Source of the DNA: Thecamonas trahens ATCC 50062
Lineage: Eukaryota > Protista > Apusomonadida
Direction: 5' to 3'
DNA: 64,000 nt
Assembly: GCF_000142905.1 (NCBI RefSeq)
Contig: NW_013657666.1
Coordinates: 258,631-322,630 of the forward strand
Each line of letters begins with the position of its first letter. Positions within the stretch are counted from its first letter, which is position 1. Positions 23,539-38,471 of this stretch are shown here, in pieces. Under the pieces are notes generated by a model that saw only the letters and a program-made list of their open reading frames with translations, was not told where the DNA came from and made no database searches. Made by a program: the position numbers and the translations under genes.

Positions 23539-24666
23539 TCACACTGCGCTCCGCCCCGCAGGCCGCCCAGCCACATGAGACCCGCTCAGTCGCGCCCGCA
23601 CATTGCGCATCGCCTCGCCAAACGTCAGCACAAGGAGCGCCTGCCCGACCTCGGCCTCGGTCCACTGCCGTGACCGCTCGTACACCGTCGCGTTGAGAAC
23701 CAGTCCCTGGCCCTGGTCGTACAACAGAATCGAGATCCACGCCAGGATAAGCCCACACAGCATAACTACAAACACGCCATACACATGCACAGAGCACGTG
23801 TACCGCAACCATGCTACCGCTCCTGTTGGCGCAGCCTCGTCGAGCACAACGCCCGCGCCGGTCCACACCAACACCATGGCAACCGCAGCCTCCACACTCA
23901 CCACAAAGCCCAGAAACGGGATCAAGTTCCGCTCCCCCACGCAGTTGTTCAGCCACACACAGTGGTGGTCAAACCCGGTCACGCACACCTGGCACTTGGA
24001 GCAGTGGTGCGTCCGCGCCGGCCGATTCACCCCGCACACCGGGCACACGCTCCAACCCGGTTCCCTGCCCGCCAGCCCGCCCTGCTTGCCTTGTTCGGGC
24101 CGAATCCAGCCTGGATCCATCTGCCATGCCGCCACGTAGCACCCGATCTGGACCGCCACCATTGCCGCCACTGCCCACCCCATCCACGCCGATGGCAGCG
24201 CAGGCAGCGCCTCACCGTAGAACACGCCCAGCACAACCACCAGAATCACCGCATACGCCAGCGGAAAGCCCCATCCACTCCCTCCTTTCTCACCTCTCTT
24301 GCCATCCGCGCCTTCTATGCCATGCTCGTTGCCGCTCCCACCCCCATGCCCATGCCCATGCCCATCGCAGCACGCCCCGCCGCCGCGCATCGCCCGCAGC
24401 TCCGCGAGCGCTGCCCCGCGCCCCACCAGCGCCGCCTCCAGCCCAGGCGTCCGCCCCGCTGCGTCGCGGCTTGTCAGCGAGCAGCCTGCGTCCATGAGCA
24501 CACTTGCTGCTACCACGTGCCCACCTGCCAGTGCCGCATGCAGCAGCGTCCGTCCAGCCGTGTCGCGCAGCGTCGCCAGCGGCACGTCGCCGGCGGCCAA
24601 CGCCACCAGCGCCTCGCTCCGCCCGCTCGCCGCAGCTGCAAACGCCTCGGCCGCCACACTGCCCAT
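23539..24666 (-). CDS. Ankyrin-repeat DHHC palmitoyltransferase (Akr1/ZDHHC17-like)
   Basis: Ankyrin GRTLLHAAL and GRTP motifs; CPVCGVNRPARTHHCSKCQVCVTGFDHHCVWLNNCVG; four TM segments; NATVYE. Confidence 0.92.
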   Translation of the reverse strand: MGSVAAEAFAAAASGRSEALVALAAGDVPLATLRDTAGRTLLHAALAGGHVVAASVLMDAGCSLTSRDAAGRTPGLEAALVGRGAALAELRAMRGGGACCDGHGHGHGGGSGNEHGIEGADGKRGEKGGSGWGFPLAYAVILVVVLGVFYGEALPALPSAWMGWAVAAMVAVQIGCYVAAWQMDPGWIRPEQGKQGGLAGREPGWSVCPVCGVNRPARTHHCSKCQVCVTGFDHHCVWLNNCVGERNLIPFLGFVVSVEAAVAMVLVWTGAGVVLDEAAPTGAVAWLRYTCSVHVYGVFVVMLCGLILAWISILLYDQGQGLVLNATVYERSRQWTEAEVGQALLVLTFGEAMRNVRARLSGSHVAGRPAGRSAV

Positions 24667-24754: not shown

Positions 24755-27700
24755 TCAAGCGTTGCGCAGCTTGAGCACAAGTCCCTCCACGCACAGGCCC
24801 GGGCCAAACGAGAGCGAGACAGCGAGCTGCCCATCGCCGCTCGCCCCGCTTGCCCGGCGCTCCTCGTCGAGTACGCAGATGACTGTGCCCGACGAAACGT
24901 TGCCCTGCCGCGCGAGGACCGCCCGCGACGATGCCGTGTGCTCCGCAGTGAGCCCGAGCGTCCGCTCGATGCCCTTGATGATGGCGATGCCGCCCGGGTG
25001 GAGCGGCCACCGCATCGACGCCAGCGGATACGGTCCGGCCCGGCCCGGCAGCGCCTTGGCCAGCAGCGAGTCGACAAAGTTGCCCACCGAGCCCTCAATC
25101 TGCGACGGGATGTCCGCCGAGAGCTCGACCACCATTCCGTCCGCAGACGCATTCCATGTCATCATGTCGCGCGTGCCCGGGATTGTGAACGCCTCGGTGG
25201 CGAGGATCTCGTACACCACCCGCTCTGACGCACGCACTCCTGCCGACGCCCCCACCACCGCCGCAGACGCGCCGTCGCCAAAAATTGCCGCCGCCACAAT
25301 GTTGTCCACCCGCGGATCGAGCTGCATGTGCAACGTGCACAGCTCGCAGCACACGCAGAGGATGCGGTACGACGGGTCCAGTGCCGCAATCGCCCGCGCT
25401 GTCTTGAGCGCAGAGTGCCCACCAAAGCATCCCATCATCAGCACGGACAACCTCTGCGTCGTCGGCTCGAGCCCGAGTTCCTGAATCACCTCGTACGCCA
25501 GCCCTGGATTGAGCATCCCGGTGCATGAGACTCCGATGACGTGGGTGATTTCTGAGAGCTCGCCGCCCCAGTCGGCCACCGCCGCCCGCGCCGCCCGCGC
25601 CGCAAGCTGAGGCGCGTGCGCCTTGTACAACGCCACGCGCTCCTCCACCTTGGCCGACGCCTCCTTCTCCAGGTTGTTGAAAAACGCTCGCCAGTCTGGA
25701 ATGACCGTGAACCGCCCCTCCACCGTAGAGTTGGCCACAATCCGCTTCAGCCGCGCCGCGTCCACGTCTGCCATCTCGAACAGCTCCACCACGTTCTCCA
25801 CAAACTCGTCGGCCGAAAAGTACGTCGTTGGCACCGCCCAGCCGAGGCCCATGATCGCCGACTCGCCGCAAATCTCAGCTTCAGCCTCGGCCTCAGCCTC
25901 GGCCTCGGCCTCAGCCTCAGCCTCGGCCTCAGCCTCAGCCTCGGCCTCAGCCTCAGCCTCAGCGTCAGCCTCAGCCTCGGCCTCAGCCTCAATTTCATCG
26001 CGACCGCTGTCCACAATCGGGTGTGCTGCTGAGGGCGATGTAGCCTGCGCGACCGTTGCCGCTGGCTCGGACTCCAGCTCATGCTCGTGCTCTGGCTCAT
26101 GCTCGGGCTTGTTGACCTCTATCCCCTTTTCTCCTGCCCGTCCGCCAGCGGCCGGCCGCGATCCAATGCTTGTCGCCCGCTCCCGCAGCTCCGCGAGCGT
26201 GACACCAGCAAGCTCCGCCAGGGGCGCGTCAACGCCAAACTGCTCAGACAGTACGCTCTGGAGCTCGGTCACCATTATCGAGTCGATGCCCAGCTCCTGC
26301 AGCGCCACATGCTCGTCGACTTGCGAGGCAGAGCTAAAGCCCAGAATCCGCGCAACCGCATCGCCGAGATCCTCGTCGCCGCGGCCGCTAGCAGCCTCCG
26401 ACACCACTACGTTAGGCACAAAGCATGCCGCAATCGTCGGCGCTGCACTCCGCCCCAGCACTTGCGCCACGCCCTCAAACACAGACTCGGCAGACTGCAA
26501 ACCCACGAGGAACCGCCCGGTGTCGGCCACCCCTCGAGCATGCCCACGCCGGCCACACCGCCGACCTGCATCGCAAGACCGGGCCATCCGGCTGCAACAC
26601 GCGCCGCCACAACCTCTTCCATCGCCGCATTGGCAAGCCCATACGCGCTCTGCCCGGCGTTGCCCAGCCCGGCCACCACAGATGAAAACGCAACGAAAAA
26701 GGCTGCGGTGCCTCCCACAGCCTCGCTCAGCACACGCGCTCCCTCAACCTTGGCCGCCCATGCTCCCTCGACCTGAGCTGCCCCAGTGTTGGCCAGCGCG
26801 CCATCAGCAAGCACGCCCGCAAGGTGGAACACGCCGTCGATCCCACTTGCCTCGCCCGCAATCAGCGCCTCAACCGCCTCCGCATCGGTCACGTCCACCG
26901 CCACTGCCGCCACGCTCGCTCCCAGTTCCTCAAGGCCCTGCACCGCCCGCACCTGCCACCGGCTCTGAACCCCACGTCGCGACAGCAAGACAAGCCGCCT
27001 CACCCCGCATCGCAACACCAGCCACCGCGCGAGCTCGAGGCCCACTCCGCCAAGCCCACCGGAGATCAGCACCGTGTTGGCGGTCGAGAGCACGCGCGGG
27101 AGCCCGGCAGTGACAGGCACGCCTCCGTTCGCCGCCTCGCTCACCTCCAGTAGCACCTTGCCCACATGCTTCCCACGCGCCATGTACCGAAAGGCAGCCT
27201 CGACCTCGCCGGCAGCAAACGTCGTTGCCGGCAGCGGGACCACCTCGCCGCTCGCCAGACCCTCGACCACCAGCGCGTGTACAGGCGCCCAAAGCGCCTC
27301 GTCGCTCATCACCTGGTCGAGGTCAATGCCATGGAACGCCGTGTTCCGCACAAATGCCCCGAGCCCGACTTGCGTGTCCATCATCAAGTCATACTTGCCG
27401 ATCTCCAAGAACGCGCCGTGCGGCGCTACAAGCCGCAGCGACGCAGCAAGCTTGTCGCCGGCAAGCGAGTTGAGAACCAGGTCAACTCCTCGCCCGTTCG
27501 TCGCCTCCAGCACCGCCCGCTCAAAAGCCGTCGACCGCGAGTGGAGAACGTGCTCCACAGCGAGCGCCGGGTAGCGCTCCAGCAGAAACGCCACCTTGGC
27601 GTTGTTACCCACAGAGGTAAAGACCTGCGCGCCACGCGCAAGGGCAATCCGGATAGCAGCCTGGCCCACTCCACCCGAGCCCGAGTGAATGAGCACGCTC

Positions 27701-30700
27701 TGGCCGGCTTTCAACCCCCGCGCACAACAAGCGCATAGTATGCCGTAGCATACACCACAGGCACCGTCGCCGCCTCTTCCAGACTCATCCCAGCAGGAAC
27801 CTCCCACACAAACCGCTCGTCGGTATCCACACGGCTCGCCAGCGCACGCCGCCCGAGTCCCATAACACGCCGCATGCCGCCGCCCGCAACCGTTCCGGAA
27901 AACTCAAATCCAAGCTCGCCGCCAGACAGCCCGTACCCGGCAACTTCTTTGCTCAGCTTACCCGACGCGAGCATCACATCCTTAAAGTTGAGCGCACCGT
28001 ACGCAACATCAACAGCAAGCCCCGAGGCAGGGCTGCTCTCGCTCTCTGGCGACTCAAACCACCCCAGCGATGAGAGTTGCCCGCGCGTCGCCACGTCAAC
28101 AACAGCCCGCACTCGCCCGTCGACAGCAGCCACCGGCACACAAGGCTCGGCGCTCTCGTCGAGCGGAATGTGCCGCCGCACGCATACACGGGCCTTGCTG
28201 TCGACTTCAACAACGCCGCGAGAGACACACGGCCCGCGATCAACGACCGCAAGTGCCTCCGCTGCGCTCATTTCGCTCGGCTTGACCACAAACAGCACCC
28301 GCGCCGCCCACCGCAACAGCCCAGCCTCCTTCAGCACGCAGCGTCCAAGCCCAACCCCACCGGCCTCGGCGTTGACAACAACTCGGACCACGCTCTCGCT
28401 CTCGGTACCCTCGGCCGCGCTCAGTAGCGACTCGCGCCACGACTCAAACTGGCCCAACTCCGCCAGCTCGGTACTCACGTCGACCGTAGCCGCAGGCTCG
28501 CCCACCCTCCGCGCCCATGCCCGCCACACCGTGCCATCGCTGCTAGCCAGTGCGCACAACAGACGCCAGTGCGCTAGCTCGTTCTCGCCAACACTGGCGG
28601 TTGTCAGAGCATACCCTGCGGCGCTATCGCACCCACTGAGCGCGTTCGCGTCCGAAACCCAGCAGACCGTCGTCTCGCCCGGCTCGGCCTCGGTCAACTT
28701 CGCCACCGGGCGGGCAACCACAAGGCCGTAGGTCAGCGCTGCACTCGCCACCTCGTCTCTGCTCACCTCAGGACACTCTTCATCCATCGCCACTGCCAGT
28801 ACCAGCGGGCGGCCACGCTCGCTCCCGGCATCCTGTGCCACCACGCTCAGCGCCAGCCCAAGACCGGCGGCGCTCGTGGTGCGTGAGCCTAGAGCTCCGT
28901 TGAGCGCCACTCGCACGACGCCGTCGACACGCGGTTGCTGGCCGCTCTTTCGCGGAGCGGAAGCCCAGCAAAAGCCGGCCATAGACATGCCGGGCGCGGT
29001 CGCACCACGCAAGACCTCGTCACGGGCCATCCGCCAGCCACCAGCAAGCATCGCCTCCGCCAAAGCGCTCGGGGCCACCCGCAGCTCTCGGACACGTGTT
29101 GGCACCCGCAGCTGCCGATCGCTCGACGCCAGCGCCACGAGCTGCAGCGCCGCATCCAAGCACACGGTGACGCCGCCAAAGACCGAGCCGCGCCACGGTT
29201 TGGTCATTCCGACAGTGCCGCCGCCCTCAGCCCGCGCCAGCGACACAAAGTCGCCGCTGTACTCGTAGCCCTTGAGCCGCAACTCGCGGTAGATGTCGCT
29301 CGCCTCGAGCCACTGGGACTCTTCAGCCTCGCCATTCGACACCTTTTCGCTTGCCTCATCTTCATCACTCTCGACCAGCGTCAGCACGCCCCTTGCCACA
29401 ACACCGGCCTCGGTCGCGATCTCAAACGCGCCCGACGCTTCCAGCACCGACACTCGGATCTTGACCTCGCCGCTGCTCGGCACAACTACCGGCCGGGCAA
29501 TGACAAAGTCCGAAAGCACAAAGCCCGGCACCTCGCATTGCGGACCGAGCGGAGCAGCCAGCGCCGGAACCAGTCCGTCGAGCCTCGCAGGCACAACGCT
29601 ACAGCCGCTGGCAGACCCGCGCCCGGCCCGCGCCAGCACCGCGGACCACGCCAGCGCAATGTAGCCCGAGGCTGGGAAAAGGACCCGCCCGTCGATGACA
29701 TGGCCAGCCACAAAGCCAAACGGCGAGTCGTCCGCGAGGCTGACAGTAAACTCGGGTGCGGCGCCCGGAAGCCGCTCGTTGCGGTGCCGGATGACGTGCC
29801 ACGGCTGCGCATCCCATGCCACAAGCGTCCTCAGCCGCGGCACACGCGCGTGTAGTGGCAGTCGGCGTGCAGCGTCGACCATCGCGCTGGCATCGCCACC
29901 CATCGCGCGAGGCAGTCGCTCCAGCAATGGCTGAGCATCCAACCCCGCTGCATACAGCTGTCCAACGCCAGTCAGCACCGCGCTGTCGCCACGGACGCCC
30001 TTGCGCGTGAGGCCGACAACTCGGCTCTCCCCCGCAGATGTCATGGCCTTGAGCAGCTTGACAAAGATCGACGACGGCCCGATCTCAATGACGCAGCAGC
30101 GGTCAGGAACCTGGGCTACCGCCGGCGCAAACGCCACTGGCGCCACAAAGTTGCGCACAAAGTACTCGGCGTCGGCAAACTCGCCAGCCTCTCCGCCAGA
30201 AGTAGAGATGAACGACGGCGCGAGTGCAGCCGGTGCCGAAAGCACGCTCACCAGCTTCTGCCGCAAGCTCTCGGCTGCACTCGCCACAAGTGGCGTGTGA
30301 AAGGCAACGCCCGACGAATTGACCTCGCGCACAAACACATCGTCGCTCCGCAGCAGCTCCAGGCACTGCGCCATTCCAGCGCAGGTGCCCGACAGCGTCA
30401 CCGACGTCGGTCCGTTGTGGCAGGCCAACCAGACTTGGCCGCTGAGCTCGTCGTGAGCGGCCAGAAACGCATTTGCGGCGTCCCAGGAGAGGCCGACCGC
30501 GGCCATGGCACCCGGCGCAGACAACGACGCCTCGGCCGCTGCCACGCCACGCCAGAACGCAACTTGCATCGCTTGCCTGACGTCCAAGCCCCCAGCAGCG
30601 GCAGCAGCGGCAATCTCGCCGGCCGAGTGGCCAAGCACCGCCGCCGGCGCGACCAGCCCGAGCTCCGCCAGCAGCGCAGTGAGCGCAAGCTGGCTAGCAG

Positions 30701-32719
30701 TCAGCGTGAGGTAGCCTATCACAGGATTGGCCAGTGCCTCCTCGTCCAGCGTGTCAAACAGCGCAACAAGGTCGGCCGCACCAGCCGGCACATGCACAGG
30801 CGCACTCGTCACTAGCGGCGCCACCGCTGACGAGGCCTCGGCCAGCACCGCCGCCACTGCCGGAAACGCTTGCGCAGTCCCGGCCATCATGCCTGCCCAC
30901 TGGGTGCCCATGCCGTTGAACACAAAAGCGTAGCGGGTGAGCGGCGAAGCAGGCGCCGGTGGTCGCAGCTTGACTGCGCCACCGGCGTCGCTCTCTTGCT
31001 GCGGCCATATGAGGCCAGTCCGGAACGGATACCGAGTCACTGGCGCGCTGCCAAACAGGCTGGCCAGCCGGTCGCTCAGTGCGGCCGGACGAGCGAGCTC
31101 GCCGGTGTAGCTCTGTAGGAGCTGGACGACCTCGGCTCTGAGCGCGGCAAGCCCATCCTGCGTCCGCGACGCCAGCGGATACATCATGTGGGGGGAGGCA
31201 CCGTCGATTGGTCGGCGCTGTCGTCAGCGGCTCGTGCGGGCTGCGGGGCGCGCACCAGAGCGTGTGCATTGGTGCCACCAAAGCCAAATGAGGAGATGGC
31301 AACCAGGCCGCCGCGCCATGGCGTCGGCTGGGTAACCACTCGCATGGTCCCTGAAAGTAGCGCTGGGATCTTGGGATTCGGCTGGGTGTAGTGAAGGTTA
31401 GGTGGAAGCACGCCGGCGCGGGCAGCGAGGCAGACCTTGATGATGCCGGCGAGACCAGAAACGTTCTCGCAGTGGCCCATGTTCGACTTGACCGATCCAA
31501 CGAGCAGCGGGTTCTCCGGCGAGCGGCTGAGCACGTGCTTGACAAACACTTCGTCGAGCGCGTTGGCCTCGACCGAGTCGCCGGCCTGGGTTCCGGTCCC
31601 GTGGGCCTCGACATAGACGACGTCTTCGGGCGTCGCGCCGGCGGCGGCGAGGCAAGATCGAATGAGTGCAACCTGCGCATCGCTGGATGGATAGGTGATG
31701 CCCTGCGGAGTATAGCCGTCGTTGTTGCATGCTGCAACAAGGAGGTCGAGGTAAGCGTTGCGGGCAGTGTCGGCAGCGTCAAGGACAATGGCAGCAATGC
31801 CCTCGGCGCGGACGTAGCCGTTGGCCGACGCATCAAACGTCTTGCAAGCTCCGTCGGGCGAGAGCATGTTGAGCTTGTCAAAGGCGACCGACCGGGTCGG
31901 GATGAGCTGGATGTTGACACCGCCCACAATTGCCCGCTCGCACTCGCCGGACCGCAGCGCGGCGAGCGCCATCGCCAGCGCCACCATGCCGGACGAGCAT
32001 GCCGTGTCCACCGTGAGCGACGGGCCGTGAAGGTCGTAAAAGTATGAAATGCGGTTGGAGAACATGTTGAGCAGACACCCGGTGTGCTCGTAGCCCGTGA
32101 TGGCGGTGGCATCCTCGAGCAGGTCAAAGTGCGAGTCCGAGAACGAACCTGCCACCCAGACTCCGGTTGAGCTTCCGGCCAGCTCGTCCAGCGTCCACCC
32201 AGCATCAGTCACAGCCTCATGGGTGGCGTGCAGCAGCAGCCGCAGCTGTGGGTCCATCTTGTCCGCCGCCTTGCCTGTCACCGCAAAGAACCTGGCGTCA
32301 AACTCGGCGATCGACGGCAGCTTGCCTGACCGCGCAGGCAGTGACCGCGCGTCCATTGTGTCCATGTCCTGTCCACCCGCCCGCCCACGTCATCACCACC
32401 ACCACCACCGCGACACAGAACTTGCATGAGTCTCTAACCTCTGCTCACCTCTGCTCTTCTCAGCGACTCTGTCCACGCCTTCACGCCCGACTCCATTGGG
32501 TCAGCGGGGGATGCCCCAGCCACTTCTTGGTGGCGTCAGCGAGCGACCTCGACCTTCCTCAGGGCCGGCAACAAGCCACCCGTCACCGCCGTCACGTACC
32601 CACCGGCGGTCGTCAGCGGTGACCATGTCAGTGCCAGCGACAAGGTTGGCAAAGAACGTCTCTGCATCTTCGGACTCTGGGAATCGGCATGAGAGGCCCG
32701 AGATCACGACCTTGGCCAT
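24755..32719 (-). CDS. Hybrid type I FAS/PKS - type III PKS ('Steely'-like) megasynthase, ~2,580 aa; intron 32369-32599; three probable homopolymer frameshifts
   Basis: KS DTACSS, EAHGTGT, SNMGH; AT GHSAG and AFH; [12 protein letters not shown] and LDAALQ; [12 protein letters not shown]; [11 protein letters not shown] and GQSAYGLAN; ACP LGIDSIM; (AE)n linker; type III triad MGCFGG, HPGG, GNVSS plus SFGPGL. The ORFs join by single-base changes in runs at 31190-31195, 27715-27719 and 26530-26533. Confidence 0.92.
25875..25990 (-). repeat. Hexanucleotide tandem repeat encoding the (Ala-Glu)n ACP-to-type III PKS linker
   Basis: (tcagcc/tcggcc)n on the + strand; translates as EAEAEA... Confidence 0.95.
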
Positions 32720-32933: not shown

Positions 32934-35900
32934 CTACCGCGGAGCGTGCCATGTGGCGAGGACCGAGGCGAGGACCGCGTGTCGTTCGCTGGGCGCTACA
33001 TTTGAGGCGTCGATGAGCGAGCGGAGGTCGGCGACGAGAGCGTCGCGCGTGATCGAGGGTGTGGTGGTGAGCGATGCAGGTGGTGGCGTGATCGAGGAAG
33101 AAGAAAGGAACAAATCACAGGCAGCGTCGGCCTCTTCCTGCTCCTCGTCGTCGATGTAGCCCTCCGAGTACTCGTACGAGTACGTATACTCCCGGTTAGC
33201 AATGCCGGAAAGAACAGCAGGGCGTGTGATCGGTGTGTGGGGTGCGGAAATCGTGCGCGGCGTCGGGTCGGCGCGCTCCTTGTGTACGGTGCCGACGCCG
33301 GGGTTGACGCTGATGAGTTTGGCGTCGGGCGAGCCGGTGAGGCGGCCGCGGCGGTTGTGGAGCTCGCGGGCAATGACAAAGATGTACAGGCCCACGACAA
33401 CGGCGTTAGTGCCGATGACCAAGACCTCGAGGACGCCAGACGATGACGCGAGGTCGCGCTCGTGGATACGCGATGAGAAGACTTGCCCGGCCACAAAGGT
33501 GAAGAGGAGCTGGACAAGGGTGATGAGCTCCAGCTTGTTGAGCGTGGGAAAGATAAACGGCTCGGTGTAGATCTGGACGAGCATGGCGGCGACAATGGTG
33601 ATAAAGAAGCCCATGGGGACGGCGAGCGAGGTTGCAGGCACAATGGCGATGATGGCAATGGCCAGCCGCCGGGCCATGATGGCAAACTCGAACCAGTGGC
33701 AAGAGTCGTGATACGCGGCGTAGAACCACTGGAACCAGTGGCCGTCGACCTCGGCGATCTTGAGCGCTTTGAGCCTTTTGAGCTGAGATTTTCGGTTGCG
33801 CATGAGGACGAGGAAGACGAGCGGGACGCCGAGGCCGTACAAGACCGAAAACAGAGCGCCGATGACGACGAGACGAATCCAAGTCGCCGACGACGACGTG
33901 CACTCGATCCAAGGGGCAGCCCAGAGGTACGACTTGCCGTCGGCCGACTCACGGCACGGAAGGACCATGAGCATGCCGACCGTGATCGGCATGTACACCA
34001 GGTTGAGGACAGCAAGGCCCGAACGAATGCCACCGTACCGCCAGTGCTTTTCCGGCTTGCCAAACAGGCCGTTGAGCGAGACCTTGGTCAGGATGGCCAA
34101 AAGGCAGTAGGCAACCAAGCAGAAGATGACCAGGACCGGGACGGCGAGCGTCGACGCCACAAACGCCGTTTCCCACGAATTGTTTGAGCTTCCGAGGCAG
34201 GTCAGGATGTTGGCCGAGGCCGAAGTCCAGCCAAAGACACCCGAGAAGAATGTGGTGACCGAGGCCGGCCACACAAAGGCCGACGAGCGAGCAAAGAGCA
34301 GCGACGAGGTCTGCATAAAGATGAACATCGACTTGACGAGCGGCGCGAGGACGACTGACCGTACACCGGTCTGATTGAGGGCGTACCACACGCAGAACGC
34401 GATCGAGTACGCAATGGCCAGGATCGTCGGTAGGATGCGCGGGCAGCGGCGACAGCGGCGGCCCTGCGGGTAGTGGCCGCGAGCACATCGCGAACATAGC
34501 CGGTCCTCGTAGCCCTCGCTACAGGTGAACGGATAGCCAGCGCTCGGGTTGCATGCCGTCTCATCGACGCCGATCGGGTAGCATGGGTCAATGAGAGGCG
34601 CGCCCGAGGCGGCAGTAGAGGCCACAAAATACCCGGGATTGATGGTAAGATTGGCAGGGTAGACAAGCGCAGTGCCAGCGCCATCGACGTCGAGCAGGAC
34701 CCGGCCGCCGTGGCAGGTCACTGCAGGCGCAAGATGGGCACACGGGAGGCACACGCCGCTCGAGCCGTGGTAGTTGGGTAGACACTCGCAGAGCGAGGCC
34801 GAGTAGTAGCCCTCGTCGAGATAAAGAGTGAGCCTTCGAGTCACAGGATCGGTGAGCGACGGGCACTTGTATGGAATGGCCGGGTTCGGCTGAATGAGCG
34901 GATAAACGGCAATGGTGTTGTCCGGGAGCGAGAGACGGTCGGGCTCGCCAAGGCCGGCGTTGCCACGCAAGTCGAGGATGGAGACGCCGTCGTCGGTGAT
35001 GCGTGAGGCCGAGCCGGTGAGATTGTTGTTGGAGAGATCGACCTCGGAGATGTGCGGGAGGAGCGAGAAGACCGTGGGGATGAGCCCAGTAATGTCGTTG
35101 TCGTTGAGGAAGAGGCGAACCATGCCCTGAAGAAAGTGGTCATTGACGACATAGAAGAGCGAGTCTTGCAGGATGCCAGACAAGGCGTTGTGGGAAAAGT
35201 CGACGGTGGCCAACGTGGTGCCGTGCTTGAGCACGTCCAGATACGCCGAGACCGGGCCGGCCAGCGCGTTGTGAGAAAAGTCGACCGATTCAAGCGTGTC
35301 GTTGAGCTTTGCCCATGAGCTGGGAAGCAGGCCGCCGGAGAACTGGTTGTGCGAGGCCTTGAGTGTGACGAGGCCGTGGACGCGCTCGGCCGACGGGATG
35401 TCGCCAGTAAAGGCGTTGAACGCCATATTGAGCTCCTTAACATAGACATCGCAGGTGGTAGGAAAGGCAGAGATTGCATTCGACGAGACATCGACGGTCT
35501 GCAGCTGCGGCTTGTCGCACAACACATCGAGGCCGCCGGCCAAGCGGTTCTCCTCCAGCTTGAGCTTTGCGAGCAAAGGGAAGCCTGGGGGAATGGTGCC
35601 TTCGAGGTGATTCTTGCCAAGCTCGAGCTGGTACATGGCCGCCATGTCAGTGCCCCACGACGGAGGAATGGTTCCGGTCAGGTTATTGGCGAAGAGCTTG
35701 AGGACAGAGAGACCGGGCAGCTTGCCGAGCTCGGGCGGGAGGGTTCCAGAGAGGCCCGGGTTATTGTAGATCAGCAACTGGTACATGGAGGTCATGTCAC
35801 CAAGTTCAGGCGGAAGCGTGCCAGTGATGTCGGTAAAAGTGATGACAAAGAGCCAGAGCGCCTTGAGCTGCCCCAGCTCGGGCGGAATGGTGCCGGAGAG

Positions 35901-36911
35901 GCCGGTCTCGTAGATGACAAAGGTCTCGAGGGCAGCCATGCCTCCCCACTCGGGGTGCATGGTCCCGCGGAGATCGGGGTTGATGGAGAGGTCGAGGCCC
36001 GCGATCTTGTCCATCGCTCCAAGCTCGGGGTAGAACGAGCCGGTGAGGCCGGTGTTGGACAGAGAGAGCGAGCGGATGGCGGACCATTGCGGAAGCCAGC
36101 GCGGCAGCGGCATGTTGAGCGGGTTGTTGCGGATGTCAAAAATGGAGATGGTCGAGTCCTTGTACTCTTCGGGAAGGCCAGTAAAGGCGCAGTCGCGGAC
36201 GATGACCTCCTCGATGCCGACGATGCGGGCGAGGACGCTCGAGAGCGGCGAGCCGCCGAGGCCTGATTGCGAGGCAAAGACAACCTTGAGCGATGTCATG
36301 CCGCTCCACGACGGCGGAAAGTTACCTTCCAGGCCAGCACCCGACGCAGGGCCACCGGTGGTGAGGACAAGCCGGCGGAGCGAGGAGAGCGAGCCCCACT
36401 CGGGCGGGAGCGGCCCGGTCAGCAGGTTCGATGAGTACACCTTGGTGTGGAAAAAGTACTTTGCAATGAGCGACATCGACGCCCAGATGGCCTCGTCCGG
36501 TAGCGCCTCGCCGCCGACGTTGATTTCGACCAGCTTGGGCATGGCGCTCGCCCACACGCCTGGCAGCGTGCCCTCCATCCGGTTGGCCGAGAGGTCGAGG
36601 ACGAGCAGCTCGGGAAGAGCCCACGCTGCGGCCTCGCTCGGCAGGCTTCCGGTCAGCCCGTTGTTCGAGAGGCGCAGCTCGACAACGTGGACAGCGCCGT
36701 CGTCGGTCGTTGCGTTCCCGCACCGCACGCCGGCATACATGCACACGTCCGGCCCGTTCCACCCGCTTGCCTCAAGCCAGGAACTCCCGTGAGTGGTGAC
36801 GAACAGTGCGTCGAGCGCCGCCTTTTCAGCCATCAGCGGATTCGCACTCGCCGCACATCCAGAGAGTGCCACCAGCAGAGCGAGCACCGTCACAACAAAG
36901 ACTGGAAGCAT
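32934..36911 (-). CDS. Receptor-like protein: signal peptide, plant-type LRR ectodomain, Cys-rich stalk, ~7 TM segments, no kinase
   Basis: LRRNT cap (W...C.YAGVRC), many LxxLxLxxNxLxGxIPxELG repeats, Cys-rich region (CSEGYEDRLCSRCARGHY), multi-pass hydrophobic C-terminus. Confidence 0.85.
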   Translation of the reverse strand: MLPVFVVTVLALLVALSGCAASANPLMAEKAALDALFVTTHGSSWLEASGWNGPDVCMYAGVRCGNATTDDGAVHVVELRLSNNGLTGSLPSEAAAWALPELLVLDLSANRMEGTLPGVWASAMPKLVEINVGGEALPDEAIWASMSLIAKYFFHTKVYSSNLLTGPLPPEWGSLSSLRRLVLTTGGPASGAGLEGNFPPSWSGMTSLKVVFASQSGLGGSPLSSVLARIVGIEEVIVRDCAFTGLPEEYKDSTISIFDIRNNPLNMPLPRWLPQWSAIRSLSLSNTGLTGSFYPELGAMDKIAGLDLSINPDLRGTMHPEWGGMAALETFVIYETGLSGTIPPELGQLKALWLFVITFTDITGTLPPELGDMTSMYQLLIYNNPGLSGTLPPELGKLPGLSVLKLFANNLTGTIPPSWGTDMAAMYQLELGKNHLEGTIPPGFPLLAKLKLEENRLAGGLDVLCDKPQLQTVDVSSNAISAFPTTCDVYVKELNMAFNAFTGDIPSAERVHGLVTLKASHNQFSGGLLPSSWAKLNDTLESVDFSHNALAGPVSAYLDVLKHGTTLATVDFSHNALSGILQDSLFYVVNDHFLQGMVRLFLNDNDITGLIPTVFSLLPHISEVDLSNNNLTGSASRITDDGVSILDLRGNAGLGEPDRLSLPDNTIAVYPLIQPNPAIPYKCPSLTDPVTRRLTLYLDEGYYSASLCECLPNYHGSSGVCLPCAHLAPAVTCHGGRVLLDVDGAGTALVYPANLTINPGYFVASTAASGAPLIDPCYPIGVDETACNPSAGYPFTCSEGYEDRLCSRCARGHYPQGRRCRRCPRILPTILAIAYSIAFCVWYALNQTGVRSVVLAPLVKSMFIFMQTSSLLFARSSAFVWPASVTTFFSGVFGWTSASANILTCLGSSNNSWETAFVASTLAVPVLVIFCLVAYCLLAILTKVSLNGLFGKPEKHWRYGGIRSGLAVLNLVYMPITVGMLMVLPCRESADGKSYLWAAPWIECTSSSATWIRLVVIGALFSVLYGLGVPLVFLVLMRNRKSQLKRLKALKIAEVDGHWFQWFYAAYHDSCHWFEFAIMARRLAIAIIAIVPATSLAVPMGFFITIVAAMLVQIYTEPFIFPTLNKLELITLVQLLFTFVAGQVFSSRIHERDLASSSGVLEVLVIGTNAVVVGLYIFVIARELHNRRGRLTGSPDAKLISVNPGVGTVHKERADPTPRTISAPHTPITRPAVLSGIANREYTYSYEYSEGYIDDEEQEEADAACDLFLSSSSITPPPASLTTTPSITRDALVADLRSLIDASNVAPSERHAVLASVLATWHAPR

Positions 36912-36977: not shown

Positions 36978-37208
36978 GAAGCAGTCGAAAGTGGTGAGGA
37001 GTGAGTGTGAGAGCGAGCGACAAAGAGAGCTGCAGAGTCAGACTGGACGCGGTATTGATATTGGCAACGTTTCGTAGCATGTGGGGGTGGCATGGTGACA
37101 TATAGCGCATGTGCCGGGTCTAGTGCTGGTCGAAGCAACGTTTGGCGGGCTAAAAGCGAGAGGCCACCTGTCGCGAGTAGCGGCCGTGGCTCTCGTACGG
37201 CTGGTGGA

Positions 37209-38471
37209 ATGGCGTATTGGCTAGAGATGCAGATGTTTCTGGTGGTTGCGACTGTGCTGCTGGCGGTGGTGGTGTCAGGGACAGGCCAAAGGTGTGCAAG
37301 CACGCCTGCGCATGCGGTTTGCTCAGTGGTGGCGTTTGGGGCGCGAGGCGACGGCAAGACGGACGACACTGGGCCGATTCAGGAGGCGCTGGCGTGCGCG
37401 GCATGTGATGTGGTGGTGCTGCCATTTGGCGGCGTGTTTGTGGCGCGCGGGGTGAACTTGAGTTCGAACACGGAGCTCCGGGTCGAGACCGGGGCGGTGC
37501 TGATGGGCGCAGCGAGCGTGGCTGGGTGGCCTTTGGTCGACGCGCTACCGTCGTATCCGCTCTCGCGTGACCACAACTCGCAGCCGCGGTATCAGGCGCT
37601 TATTGCTGGGTATGATGTGGTCAATGTGAGCATTAGCGGCGGCGGGCGGATCGACGGGCGCGGAGAGATGTGGTGGCGTGCGGTCCGGAAGCACGAGTTG
37701 AGCATGCAGCGGCCGCCGCTCATCGAGATAGTGGGTGGCGTCGGTGTGCGGATCACCGAGCTCGAGCTCAAGGACTCACCGTACTACCACATCCATCCAT
37801 ACATGTGCCGCGGAGTAGTTGTCGACCGGGTCCGCATCGACGCGCCGCTCGGCTCGCCCAACACCGACGGCATCGACCCAGATTCTTCGTCGGACGTGCG
37901 CATCACGAGGTGCACCATAAGCTCCGGCGATGACCACATCTCGCTCAAAGCCGGCAAGGGCTGGGAGGGGTACGCGTGGGGCGTGCCGACAGAGCGGGTG
38001 CTCATTGCCGACAATATCTTTCATCACGGCGCCGGCATCGCCATCGGCTCCGAGACCGGCGGCGGCATCGCGGACGTAGTGGTGTCCAACGCAACTCTCG
38101 ATGCGTCGCAGAGCGCTGTTCGCTTCAAGACGTGCCCGACGTATGGCCGCGGAATGACTAACGTGACCTACGACGGGGTGGTCGGCATCGGGCTGCTCGA
38201 CGGCTTGTTTGTCGACATGGCATACGAGTGCGGAGCAGCGAACGCAAGCCTCCCCGCTCCGATCTTTGCCAGTGTCACGCTCCGCAACCTCCAGCTGGAC
38301 GGAATCGGTCGCGCCGGGGCGATCACGTGCCTGCCGAGCGGCTGCCGCAACTGGCGCCTGGCCGACGTGCATGTCGCGTCGATTGAGGGCTGGACCGTCA
38401 CGCCCGGTGGCATGGTAGAGACGACCACGACAAACGTCGAGCCGGAATGGCCAAGATCAAGACCGGGCTAG
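37209..38471 (+). CDS. Secreted glycoside hydrolase family 28 (polygalacturonase-like)
   Basis: FGARGDGKTDDT, catalytic NTDGID and GDD, HG..IAIGSE, VRFKT; signal-peptide-like N-terminus. Confidence 0.9.
   Translation: MAYWLEMQMFLVVATVLLAVVVSGTGQRCASTPAHAVCSVVAFGARGDGKTDDTGPIQEALACAACDVVVLPFGGVFVARGVNLSSNTELRVETGAVLMGAASVAGWPLVDALPSYPLSRDHNSQPRYQALIAGYDVVNVSISGGGRIDGRGEMWWRAVRKHELSMQRPPLIEIVGGVGVRITELELKDSPYYHIHPYMCRGVVVDRVRIDAPLGSPNTDGIDPDSSSDVRITRCTISSGDDHISLKAGKGWEGYAWGVPTERVLIADNIFHHGAGIAIGSETGGGIADVVVSNATLDASQSAVRFKTCPTYGRGMTNVTYDGVVGIGLLDGLFVDMAYECGAANASLPAPIFASVTLRNLQLDGIGRAGAITCLPSGCRNWRLADVHVASIEGWTVTPGGMVETTTTNVEPEWPRSRPG

What the first reader, a model, noticed from the sequence alone, without database searches (positions are those of the whole stretch)
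24755..32719. 'Steely'-type type I FAS/PKS - type III PKS fusion in a flagellated protist
Seen: one co-linear reading KS-AT-DH-ER-KR-ACP-(AE)n-type III PKS. All catalytic residues are present (KS Cys/His/His, AT Ser, DH His/Asp, KR Tyr, ACP Ser, type III Cys-His-Asn), and the ACP and type III domain share one uninterrupted ORF (26587-24755). Known: this architecture is the hallmark of the Dictyostelium Steely enzymes, StlA (alkylresorcinol MPBD) and StlB (phlorocaprophenone, the DIF-1 precursor). There the type III domain replaces the thioesterase and cyclises the acyl chain into a signalling molecule. Inference: this flagellate makes an uncharacterised alkyl-resorcinol, alkyl-pyrone or acylphloroglucinol for signalling or defence. 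Frameshifts and an intron split the gene into five ORFs, so automated annotation could easily miss the fusion.
Basis: partly seen in the sequence, partly recalled or inferred. Interest (0 to 1): 0.95.

Follow-up and report, generated by a model that had tools for sequence, protein, structure and literature searches.

The report
Animal-type fatty-acid synthase fused to chalcone-synthase-like enzyme
A marine, GC-rich flagellate carries one intact gene of about 2,578 codons that joins a complete animal-type fatty acid synthase to a type III polyketide synthase; this design is described in the literature only for the Dictyostelium 'Steely' enzymes, and here it seems to have arisen separately from different parent genes.

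Summary
On the minus strand (32719..24755), Pfam finds KS, AT, DH, ER, KR, ACP, an acidic (AE)n linker and a type III PKS, in that order, with all catalytic motifs present. ACP and the type III domain share one ORF.

The gene is not broken in nature. The only three indels in marine and estuary metagenome contigs 95-100% identical (most >=99%) are single bases. Each lengthens a C or G run at a frame break and restores one frame, so the breaks are probably assembly errors. The one intron (32599..32369) sits at the same codon in a 60-76% identical marine relative.

The architecture and probable mechanism are Steely-like, but this is not a Steely orthologue:
- The type I half is sister to metazoan FASN (support 100/100). 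Steely, Willaertia and Naegleria enzymes match Dictyostelium Pks16-type PKSs.
- The type III domain groups with a Rhodelphis enzyme. An AU test rejects one clade for all such fusions (p 0.0009).

The fusion is also not unique to dictyostelids. Databases hold unreported examples from Heterolobosea, Percolomonas, Physarum and metagenomes.

Other first-stage notes in this scan flagged the same stretch, with the FASN-like half and the homopolymer breaks. I tested both and they hold. The product is unknown.

The parts
32600..32719 (-). Exon 1: start codon and the first 40 codons of the KS domain, ending ...[10 protein letters not shown].
   Evidence: Translation. It aligns to the N-termini of metazoan FASN, which share the ...DMVTxDDRRW motif. 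The marine relative L013 ends its exon at the same Trp codon.
32369..32599 (-). Intron of 231 nt, phase 0, GTACGT...AG.
   Evidence: The frame through it holds stops. The donor and acceptor were read. The relative L013 has GTACGC straight after the same Trp codon and an AG just before the homologous D-x-x-x-x-D-A-R-S-L-P codons, while the intron sequence itself is unrelated. No RNA read was laid across it.
31388..32368 (-). Rest of the KS domain, with Cys 31999, His 31603 and His 31474.
   Evidence: Pfam ketoacyl-synt and Ketoacyl-synt_C, E 4.5e-60 and 6.3e-35. The best solved relatives are human, pig and mouse FASN at E 1e-116. Residue positions.
31190..31195 (.). Frame break 1 (KS-AT linker), at a run of six G on the + strand. 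The assembly lacks one base here.
   Evidence: Contigs of two independent metagenome runs, X1 and X9, carry one extra G behind 31189. The frame goes from mod-3 class 1 to 2, as a single missing base predicts.
29940..30926 (-). Acyltransferase (malonyl/acetyl transferase type), with GHSAG Ser at 30626 and the AFH motif at 30299.
   Evidence: Pfam Acyl_transf_1, E 5e-42. Alignment to human FASN. Positions.
28920..29756 (-). Dehydratase, with His 29702 in [10 protein letters not shown] and Asp 29156.
   Evidence: Pfam PKS_DH_N and PS-DH. Alignment to the human FASN DH domain. Positions.
27715..28439 (-). Structural (pseudo-KR-like) region and the N-terminal part of the enoyl reductase. The stretch between DH and this region is about 160 residues, against about 315 in human FASN (the pseudo-methyltransferase region).
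   Evidence: Third aligned stretch to human FASN: residues 917-1157 of the ORF match FASN 1456-1695.
27715..27719 (.). Frame break 2 (inside ER), at a run of five C on the + strand. The assembly lacks one base here.
   Evidence: A contig of run X1 carries one extra C behind 27714. The ER motif ...VVRG / [18 protein letters not shown] continues across the break in the next frame.
27139..27714 (-). Enoyl reductase, C-terminal part, with the GSGGVG nucleotide-binding motif.
   Evidence: Pfam ADH_zinc_N and ADH_zinc_N_2. Alignment to Drosophila and human FASN at E 1e-93.
26533..27075 (-). Ketoreductase, with the GGLGGVG motif and Tyr 26643.
   Evidence: Pfam KR, E 4.7e-40. Alignment to FASN. Positions.
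26530..26533 (.). Frame break 3 (end of KR), at a run of four C on the + strand. The assembly lacks one base here.
   Evidence: A contig of run X1 carries one extra C behind 26529. Frame class goes from 0 to 1.
26186..26368 (-). Acyl carrier protein, with the phosphopantetheine Ser at 26281 in LGIDSI.
   Evidence: Pfam PP-binding, E 5.5e-10. Position.
25874..26140 (-). Acidic low-complexity tether of about 90 residues: (EH/EP)n at 26107..26063, then (AE)15 at 25963..25874.
   Evidence: Translation. Coordinates.
24758..25870 (-). Type III polyketide synthase domain, with Cys 25429, His 25000 and Asn 24901. The stop codon is 24757..24755.
   Evidence: Pfam Chal_sti_synt_N (1.8e-37) and Chal_sti_synt_C (3.2e-24). 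The best solved relative is Steely1, 2H84, at E 4e-57. The triad is conserved in the family alignment.

Best explanation
The locus is one intact nuclear gene with two exons and about 2,578 codons. It encodes a homodimer-type megasynthase.

The first part is a complete metazoan-type fatty acid synthase (KS, AT, DH, ER, KR, ACP). Its terminal thioesterase has been replaced by an acidic flexible tether and a type III polyketide synthase.

Inferred mechanism:
1. The fully reducing type I part builds a saturated acyl chain on its own ACP from acetyl and malonyl units.
2. With no thioesterase, the chain leaves by transfer from the ACP to the active-site cysteine of the tethered type III domain.
3. 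That domain adds two or three more malonyl units and cyclises the product to an alkyl-resorcinol, alkyl-pyrone or acyl-phloroglucinol type lipid.

This works like the Dictyostelium Steely enzymes, but it was assembled separately. The chassis is an animal-type FASN rather than a Dictyostelium-type PKS, and the type III domain comes from a different branch of a protist clade whose sampled members are mostly fused behind carrier proteins.

The three frame breaks in the assembly are most likely homopolymer sequencing errors.

What is shown and what is inferred:
- Shown: architecture, motifs, continuity of the frame, and the family placement of both halves.
- Inferred: the hand-off, chain length, product and biological role.
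For: Architecture and motifs.

Intactness:
- The only three indels seen in 6 kb of contigs 95-100% identical (most >=99%), from metagenome runs X1 and X9, are +1 base in the homopolymers at 26529, 27714 and 31189.
- Each frame step is +1, as a missing base predicts, and the four segments hold no stop.
- The relative P0002/P0151, from two marine samples, has the whole KS...type III PKS (T3) region in one uninterrupted ORF. KS is 76% and the type III domain 74% identical to the window.

Intron: conserved in position in L013.

FASN descent of the type I half:
- The best solved relatives of all three type I pieces are animal FASN.
- P0002 scores 1024 bits against human FASN.
- The nearest full-length proteins are metazoan FASN with a thioesterase, at about 45% identity.
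- In the KS tree, window plus P0002 is sister to metazoan FASN with support 100/100.
- StlA, Willaertia and the environmental protein P0024 instead match Dictyostelium Pks16 best and form their own KS clade with support 97/90.

Type III domain:
- It lies in a well-supported clade that holds all the fused type III domains recovered.
- It is sister to the Rhodelphis enzyme with support 95/90.
- A single clade of all KS...ACP-T3 fusions is rejected, p-AU 0.00087.
- It shares the SCTG and GNxSSGTV signatures with the Rhodelphis type III PKS and with P0004, a FAAL (fatty acyl-AMP ligase)-ACP-T3 protein, not with Steely.

Cofactor and context:
- Phosphopantetheinyl transferases are present in the genome.
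- This is the only type III PKS locus and the only FASN-like KS in the genome.
- A weak hit to a Pfam family specific to fungal-type FAS (FAS_meander, 28.5 bits, E 2e-5) elsewhere hints at separate bulk lipid synthesis.

Steely mechanism as described: PMC9489281.
Against: - There is no biochemical or metabolite evidence.
- No read of the organism's own RNA or DNA was laid. The metagenome contigs have low depth (3-5), and only 26400..32399 was covered, so the ACP-to-type III part and the intron donor were not checked with reads.
- Expression evidence is limited to two short seawater metatranscriptome contigs, which could derive from DNA.
- The backbone of the type III tree is unresolved under the better model.
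- The AU group was defined after the first tree had been seen.
- KS sampling lacked other Dictyostelium PKSs, fungal PKSs and non-metazoan FASN.
- Steely1 is still the best solved match of the type III domain.
- No full-length joined protein was built or searched. The relative P0002 served as a proxy for full-length searches.
Confidence: 0.75

Rival explanations
1. Single origin. The fusion is an ancient relative of Steely, inherited or transferred from the same ancestral fusion. The FASN-like look of the type I half would then come from later replacement or rapid divergence.
For: All fused type III domains recovered fall in one supported clade. Steely1 is the best solved match of the type III domain. 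In the thin KS sample, the FASN clade and the Steely clade are neighbours with support 95/89. The backbone of the type III tree is a polytomy.
Against: Both halves disagree with a shared fusion. The KS groups with metazoan FASN at 100/100, apart from the Steely, Willaertia and environmental-protein clade. ER-KR and AT-DH give the same answer. StlA aligns end to end with Pks16 at 1728 bits, against 499 for FASN. One clade for the type III domains is rejected at p 0.00087.
Confidence: 0.13
2. Pseudogene. The three frameshifts are real in the sequenced strain, and the gene is dead there.
For: The assembly as given has three frame breaks.
Against: All three breaks are single-base shortenings of C or G runs. 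Near-identical environmental contigs carry the longer run at exactly these three places and show no other indel. The four segments, 7.6 kb in all, hold no stop codon. All catalytic motifs are intact. The runs from the same organism date from 2010 and are small; I take this as fitting an error-prone homopolymer chemistry, which is my inference.
Confidence: 0.05
3. No direct hand-off. The type III domain is cut off at the low-complexity linker, or acts on free acyl-CoA, and the type I part unloads its product by another route such as a trans-acting thioesterase or transferase.
For: The (AE)n and (EH/EP)n tether of about 90 residues could be a protease-accessible site. Processing of StlB is reported to change its product (PMC9489281). 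Classical type III PKSs use CoA esters (PMC12625978).
Against: There is no thioesterase in the protein. Fusion directly behind a carrier protein recurs in many members of this type III clade with quite different upstream modules, which argues for carrier-fed loading. Both KS and the type III domain are about 75% conserved with the relative in one ORF.
Confidence: 0.1

Closest known systems
Dictyostelium Steely enzymes StlA and StlB (hybrid type I FAS/PKS plus type III PKS; C-terminal domain structure 2H84)
   Same: One polypeptide with KS, AT, DH, ER, KR, ACP, then a type III PKS in place of a thioesterase. The Cys-His-Asn triad is intact. Steely1 is the best solved match of the type III domain, at E 4e-57. 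The likely logic is the same: an acyl chain made on the ACP is passed to the type III domain for extension and cyclisation (PMC9489281).
   Different: - The Steely type I half belongs to the Dictyostelium PKS family: StlA against Pks16 (9NJU) scores 1728 bits over residues 6-2665. Two of the three dictyostelid Steely proteins examined (Cavenderia P0036, D. discoideum P0155) also carry a methyltransferase domain.
- The window's half is metazoan-FASN-like, has no methyltransferase domain and is about 500 residues shorter.
- The type III domains are 31-33% identical and do not form one clade.
- The active-site neighbourhood reads SCTG here against S[ST]TG in Steely.
Metazoan fatty acid synthase (FASN)
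   Same: Co-linear from the first residues (…PESE…DMVTxDDRRW) through KS, AT, DH, structural region, ER, KR and ACP. It is sister to metazoan FASN in the KS tree at 100/100. The relative shows about 45% identity over the structural region, ER and KR. The same catalytic motifs are present.
   Different: The thioesterase is replaced by an acidic tether plus a type III PKS. The region between DH and ER is about half as long. None of the 119 other proteins listed in that search carries a type III domain.
Unreported type I to type III fusions of Heterolobosea (Willaertia magna KAL9644327.1, Naegleria lovaniensis XP_044550103.1) and the environmental protein P0024
   Same: Willaertia and P0024 have the same KS, AT, DH, ER, KR, ACP, T3 order; the Naegleria entry is a 1,591-residue ER-KR...T3 partial. 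All are found outside Dictyostelia.
   Different: Their type I halves match Pks16-type PKS best and group with Steely in the KS tree. Their type III domains grouped with Steely in the quick tree (support 97) but are unresolved in the careful tree. They look like true Steely relatives; the window's gene does not.
FAAL (fatty acyl-AMP ligase)-ACP-type III PKS and A-ACP-KS-AT-MT-ACP-type III PKS proteins of protists (Physarum P0020, Percolomonas P0154, marine contigs P0004/5/11/19)
   Same: The type III domain sits directly behind a carrier protein and belongs to the same clade. The window shares the SCTG and GNxSSGTV signatures with P0004, a member of this group, and with the Rhodelphis type III PKS.
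   Different: The upstream module activates a ready-made acid (AMP-binding domain) or is a non-reducing PKS module, rather than a complete reducing FAS.

Membership tests
Steely-type hybrid synthase (architecture class) | One polypeptide with KS, AT, DH, ER, KR, ACP followed by a C-terminal type III PKS in place of a thioesterase | tested here: met
   Pfam on the four ORF pieces. ACP and the type III domain lie in one ORF. The frame is restored by the three bases seen in environmental contigs. The relative P0002 has the whole KS...T3 region in one ORF.
Steely-type hybrid synthase (architecture class) | Catalytic residues of all domains intact | tested here: met
   Motifs located. Alignments to FASN and Steely1.
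Steely lineage (orthology with StlA/StlB) | Type I half belongs to the Dictyostelium-type PKS family, as in StlA | tested here: not met
   The window's KS scores 390 bits against FASN and 238 against Pks16. StlA scores 1728 bits against Pks16 and 499 against FASN. In the KS tree the window joins FASN at 100/100, while the Steely clade is separate at 97/90.
Steely lineage (orthology with StlA/StlB) | Type III domain groups with the Steely type III domains | tested here: not met
   It is sister to the Rhodelphis type III PKS at 95/90. The AU test rejects one clade of all KS...ACP-T3 fusions at p 0.00087. Caveats: the backbone is otherwise unresolved, and the group was chosen after the tree had been seen.
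Steely lineage (orthology with StlA/StlB) | Direct ACP to type III transfer, with an alkylresorcinol or acylphloroglucinol product | not testable with these tools
   This needs enzyme assays and metabolite analysis.
Metazoan-type FASN | Co-linear KS, AT, DH, structural region, ER, KR, ACP, with KS and ER-KR in the FASN clade | tested here: met
   The N-terminal motif is shared with FASN.
Metazoan-type FASN | C-terminal thioesterase that releases free fatty acid | tested here: not met
   No thioesterase hit in any piece. The position is taken by the type III PKS. Nearly all FASN relatives carry PF00975.
Type III PKS (chalcone/stilbene synthase superfamily) | Both Pfam halves above cut-off and the Cys-His-Asn triad | tested here: met
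   129 and 86 bits against cut-offs of 27. The triad is conserved.

The most novel reading that the evidence does not exclude
A second, independent invention of the 'fatty acid synthase feeds a type III polyketide synthase' megasynthase. It is built on a metazoan-type FASN chassis, in a marine flagellate that I guess to be an apusomonad. It belongs to a broader, undescribed protist clade of type III PKSs, most of whose sampled members are fused behind carrier proteins with several different upstream modules. If so, the Steely principle is a recurrent evolutionary solution rather than a dictyostelid peculiarity, and abundant marine bacterivores would make so far unknown alkyl-phenolic lipids.
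Probability: 0.6. Interest if true: 0.7.

Novelty: new variant of a known kind. Interest (0 to 1): 0.62.

Why it matters
Papers from 2022 and 2025 still describe the Steely fusions as unique to social amoebae and not reported elsewhere (PMC9489281, PMC12625978).

This locus, and the database relatives found while testing it, show three things:
- The design exists in at least three further eukaryotic lineages.
- The version here rests on a different parent synthase, an animal-type FASN.
- The fused type III domains recovered all fall in one clade, most of whose sampled members sit behind carrier proteins.

Possible consequences:
- It offers a natural comparison for how a type III PKS is made to accept an ACP-bound chain, which matters for engineering. 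StlB has already been used for cannabinoid precursors (PMC9489281).
- It gives a compact FASN-based scaffold, about 500 residues shorter than Steely.
- It points to unknown phenolic lipids in marine heterotrophic flagellates. The same gene was found in estuary and open-ocean metagenomes.

Practical point for annotators: three homopolymer errors and one intron split the gene in the assembly.

Tried and rejected
- A word-based search for full-length fusions with the type III region of P0002 returned only itself and D. discoideum StlA, so it is too insensitive to count fusions.
- The same tool with the KS region was swamped by multi-module bacterial PKSs and told nothing about kinship.
- Literature searches for Thecamonas plus polyketide or fatty acid synthase, Naegleria plus type III PKS, 'Steely-like', and fused type III PKS in protists found no report of such a fusion outside Dictyostelia. 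This covers only the open-access library. Shimizu et al. 2017 and Austin et al. 2006 could not be read.
- A 44-nt GT...AG 'mini-intron' at the KS/AT break would also restore the frame. I rejected it because it would delete the conserved linker residues and because environmental contigs simply carry one more G there.
- Synteny with the marine relative: its downstream gene has no match in the window.
- Naming the organism: the tools hide it. Thecamonas trahens is my guess. It rests on the marine habitat, the flagellar genes, GC of about 64%, the 28.7 Mb genome and the 2010 sequencing runs, and it is untested.
- The metatranscriptome contig of run X18 that joins 26912 to 30842 with 15 foreign letters has only 18-21 matching bases on each side. 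I treated it as unrelated.
All searches used the ORF pieces by reference or the natural relative P0002.

Full report
**What is in the sequence**

The minus strand between 32719 and 24755 carries four long overlapping ORFs in three frames, plus a short first exon. Pfam assigns them as follows:
- 32365..31187: KS.
- 31187..27714: AT and DH.
- 27807..26410: ER (ADH_zinc_N) and KR.
- 26587..24758: PP-binding, then Chal_sti_synt_N and Chal_sti_synt_C.

The ACP and the type III domain are therefore in one uninterrupted ORF. An acidic tether of about 90 residues separates them and ends in fifteen perfect Ala-Glu units.

All catalytic motifs are present, and I located each one:
- KS: Cys, His, His.
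- AT: GHSxG and the AFH motif.
- DH: HxxxGxxxxP and Asp.
- ER and KR: both nucleotide-binding motifs.
- KR: Tyr.
- ACP: Ser.
- Type III PKS: Cys, His, Asn.

**Exon 1 and the intron**

The start codon at 32719 opens 40 codons that end in ...[10 protein letters not shown] and are followed directly by GTACGT. The frame then holds stops until an AG at 32370..32369.

The N-terminal peptide matches the N-termini of metazoan FASN almost motif for motif.

A marine metagenome contig encodes a 60-76% identical relative (L013). It ends its exon at the same Trp codon, continues with GTACGC, and resumes after an AG just before the homologous codons. The intron sequence itself is unrelated. The intron model therefore rests on conservation rather than on RNA reads.

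**The frame breaks**

The frame class of the codons goes 1, 2, 0, 1 along the gene. Each step is what the loss of one base produces.

Each break lies at a run of C or G: four C at 26530, five C at 27715 and six G at 31190 on the + strand.

I laid contigs of three metagenome runs and one metatranscriptome run on 26400..32399, the 6,000 letters allowed. The contigs of estuary run X1 and marine run X9 are 95-100% identical to the window, most of them at 99% or more. The only three indels reported are one extra C behind 26529, one extra C behind 27714 and one extra G behind 31189, the last seen in two runs.

The four frame segments hold no stop codon. With the three bases the gene counts 2,578 codons.

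The relative P0002/P0151, from two separate marine samples, has the whole KS-to-type III region in one ORF.

The runs labelled with the same organism date from 2010 and 2020 and are very small. I infer an assembly from a chemistry prone to homopolymer errors.

I conclude that the breaks are assembly errors and that the gene is intact in nature.

Limits of this check:
- The contigs have depth 3-5.
- 24755..26399 and 32400..32719 were not covered.
- Everything was done on the pieces by reference, or on the natural relative P0002.

**Whose genome**

- The window and its contig (the window starts 258 kb into C14) carry ordinary eukaryotic genes: kinesin, a dynein heavy chain, an ABCA-type transporter, a DHHC palmitoyltransferase and ATG14.
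- Window GC is 0.59-0.69.
- The 28.7 Mb genome encodes radial spoke protein 3 and IFT57 at E 1e-92, so the organism builds a motile flagellum.
- The stretch occurs in estuary and marine metagenomes.

This rules out a dictyostelid or a chimeric contig. An apusomonad such as Thecamonas trahens is my untested guess.

**Is the architecture unique to Dictyostelium?**

Two recent papers say the Steely fusions are unique and unreported elsewhere (PMC9489281; PMC12625978). I found no contrary report in the open library.

An exhaustive HMMER search of 1.84 billion representatives with the ACP plus type III ORF, followed by Pfam scans and name look-ups, nevertheless shows the following:
- The same KS, AT, DH, ER, KR, ACP, T3 order in Willaertia magna and two uncultured lineages (P0002/P0151 and P0024), besides dictyostelids; Naegleria lovaniensis has an ER-KR...T3 partial entry.
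- A-ACP-KS-AT-MT-ACP-T3 in Percolomonas.
- FAAL (fatty acyl-AMP ligase)-ACP-T3 in Physarum and in several marine contigs.

In the tree of 155 type III domains, all the fused forms fall in one supported clade of 34 rows.

**Same lineage as Steely?**

Both halves say no.

Type I half:
- The best solved relatives of the window's KS, AT-DH and ER-KR pieces are human, pig, mouse and fly FASN, at E 1e-116, 1e-95 and 1e-93. Dictyostelium Pks16 lies far behind or is absent.
- P0002 scores 1024 bits against human FASN.
- Its nearest full-length proteins are metazoan FASN at about 45% identity; nearly all carry a thioesterase and none a type III domain.
- By contrast, StlA aligns end to end with Pks16 at 1728 bits against 499 for FASN. 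Willaertia and P0024 also match Pks16 best.
- In a mixture-model KS tree, window plus P0002 is sister to nine metazoan FASN at 100/100. Dictyostelids, Willaertia and P0024 form a separate clade at 97/90.

Type III half:
- In the careful tree, window plus P0002 is sister to a Rhodelphis marinus enzyme at 95/90, and the rest of the backbone is unresolved.
- Forcing all KS...ACP-T3 fusions into one clade costs 50.8 log-likelihood units, p-AU 0.00087. The group was defined after the first tree had been seen.
- Signature motifs (SCTG, GNxSSGTV) are shared with the Rhodelphis enzyme and with P0004, a FAAL-ACP-T3 protein, not with Steely.
- Steely1 remains the best solved structure match at E 4e-57, which reflects the shared wider clade.

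**How it most likely works**

The type I part has every reducing domain and a malonyl-type AT, so it should make a saturated acyl-ACP.

No thioesterase is present. The only catalytic domain downstream of the ACP is the tethered type III PKS. Transfer of the chain to its cysteine, two or three malonyl extensions and cyclisation would give an alkyl-resorcinol, alkyl-pyrone or acyl-phloroglucinol. This is the scheme proposed for StlB.

FASN and type III PKSs are both homodimers by established knowledge, so the fusion is geometrically plausible.

Supporting context from the genome:
- Phosphopantetheinyl transferases exist in the genome.
- This is the only type III PKS locus and the only FASN-like KS.
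- A weak hit to the fungal-type FAS 'meander' family (28.5 bits, E 2e-5), 8 kb from a transferase domain, hints that bulk fatty acid synthesis is done by another enzyme.

KS and the type III domain are each about 75% identical to the relative, while AT-DH is 42%. Both ends are therefore the most conserved parts.

Chain length, product and role are not determined. No tailoring gene stands next to the locus.

**Verdict**

This is a real, intact, Steely-like megasynthase in a marine flagellate. It works like Steely, probably, but it is not a member of the Steely lineage. The best reading is an independent fusion of an animal-type FASN with a type III PKS from a clade whose sampled members are mostly fused behind carrier proteins.

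It is a new variant of a known kind. It is of clear interest to polyketide and protist biologists but not categorically new, because the parts and the principle are known and similar unreported fusions already sit in public databases.

Other first-stage notes in this scan on the same stretch made the same two points, the FASN-like half and the homopolymer breaks. I tested both here and they hold.

Noticed in passing
G000:C21:314926-315243 and C21:323185-323400 (loci L009, L012): A hit to the fungal-type FAS 'meander' family lies 8 kb from a phosphopantetheinyl-transferase domain, on the same strand. This may be a fungal-type type I FAS that does the bulk fatty acid synthesis.
   Followed up: partly
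L008:166-8406 (G000:C5:327865-336105): An intronless 2,746-residue ORF with KS and AT at the N-terminus and a weak ACPS-like match near the C-terminus. About 1,800 residues have no Pfam match. It is the only other type I-like KS in the genome, at 36% identity.
   Followed up: partly
P0001 (Cymbomonas tetramitiformis KAK3233920.1): A 4,818-residue protein made of twelve tandem type III PKS domains of two alternating kinds. In the family alignment, related two-domain proteins (P0014, P0033) lack the catalytic Cys or His in their first domain.
   Followed up: no
P0020 (Physarum), P0004, P0005, P0011, P0019; P0154 (Percolomonas); P0030, P0038: There are whole families of AMP-ligase-ACP-type III PKS and A-ACP-KS-(AT)-MT-ACP-type III PKS proteins in protists and marine metagenomes. 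I found none of them described in the open literature searched.
   Followed up: partly
window 32937-36911 (-): The gene directly upstream is a 1,325-residue LRR protein with weak hits to families named after Dictyostelium proteins (ComC LRR, DUF7630). Another first-stage note calls it an LRR ectodomain on a multi-pass membrane body.
   Followed up: no
window 23542-24666 (-) and 37092-38468 (+): An ankyrin-DHHC palmitoyltransferase lies immediately downstream of the synthase on the same strand. A GH28 pectinase-like gene lies 4 kb upstream. No link to the synthase is shown.
   Followed up: no
window 26912 / 30842 (run X18): One seawater metatranscriptome contig touches both places with 18-21 bases each and has 15 foreign letters between them. 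It most likely comes from another organism or is an assembly chimera, not a splice.
   Followed up: no
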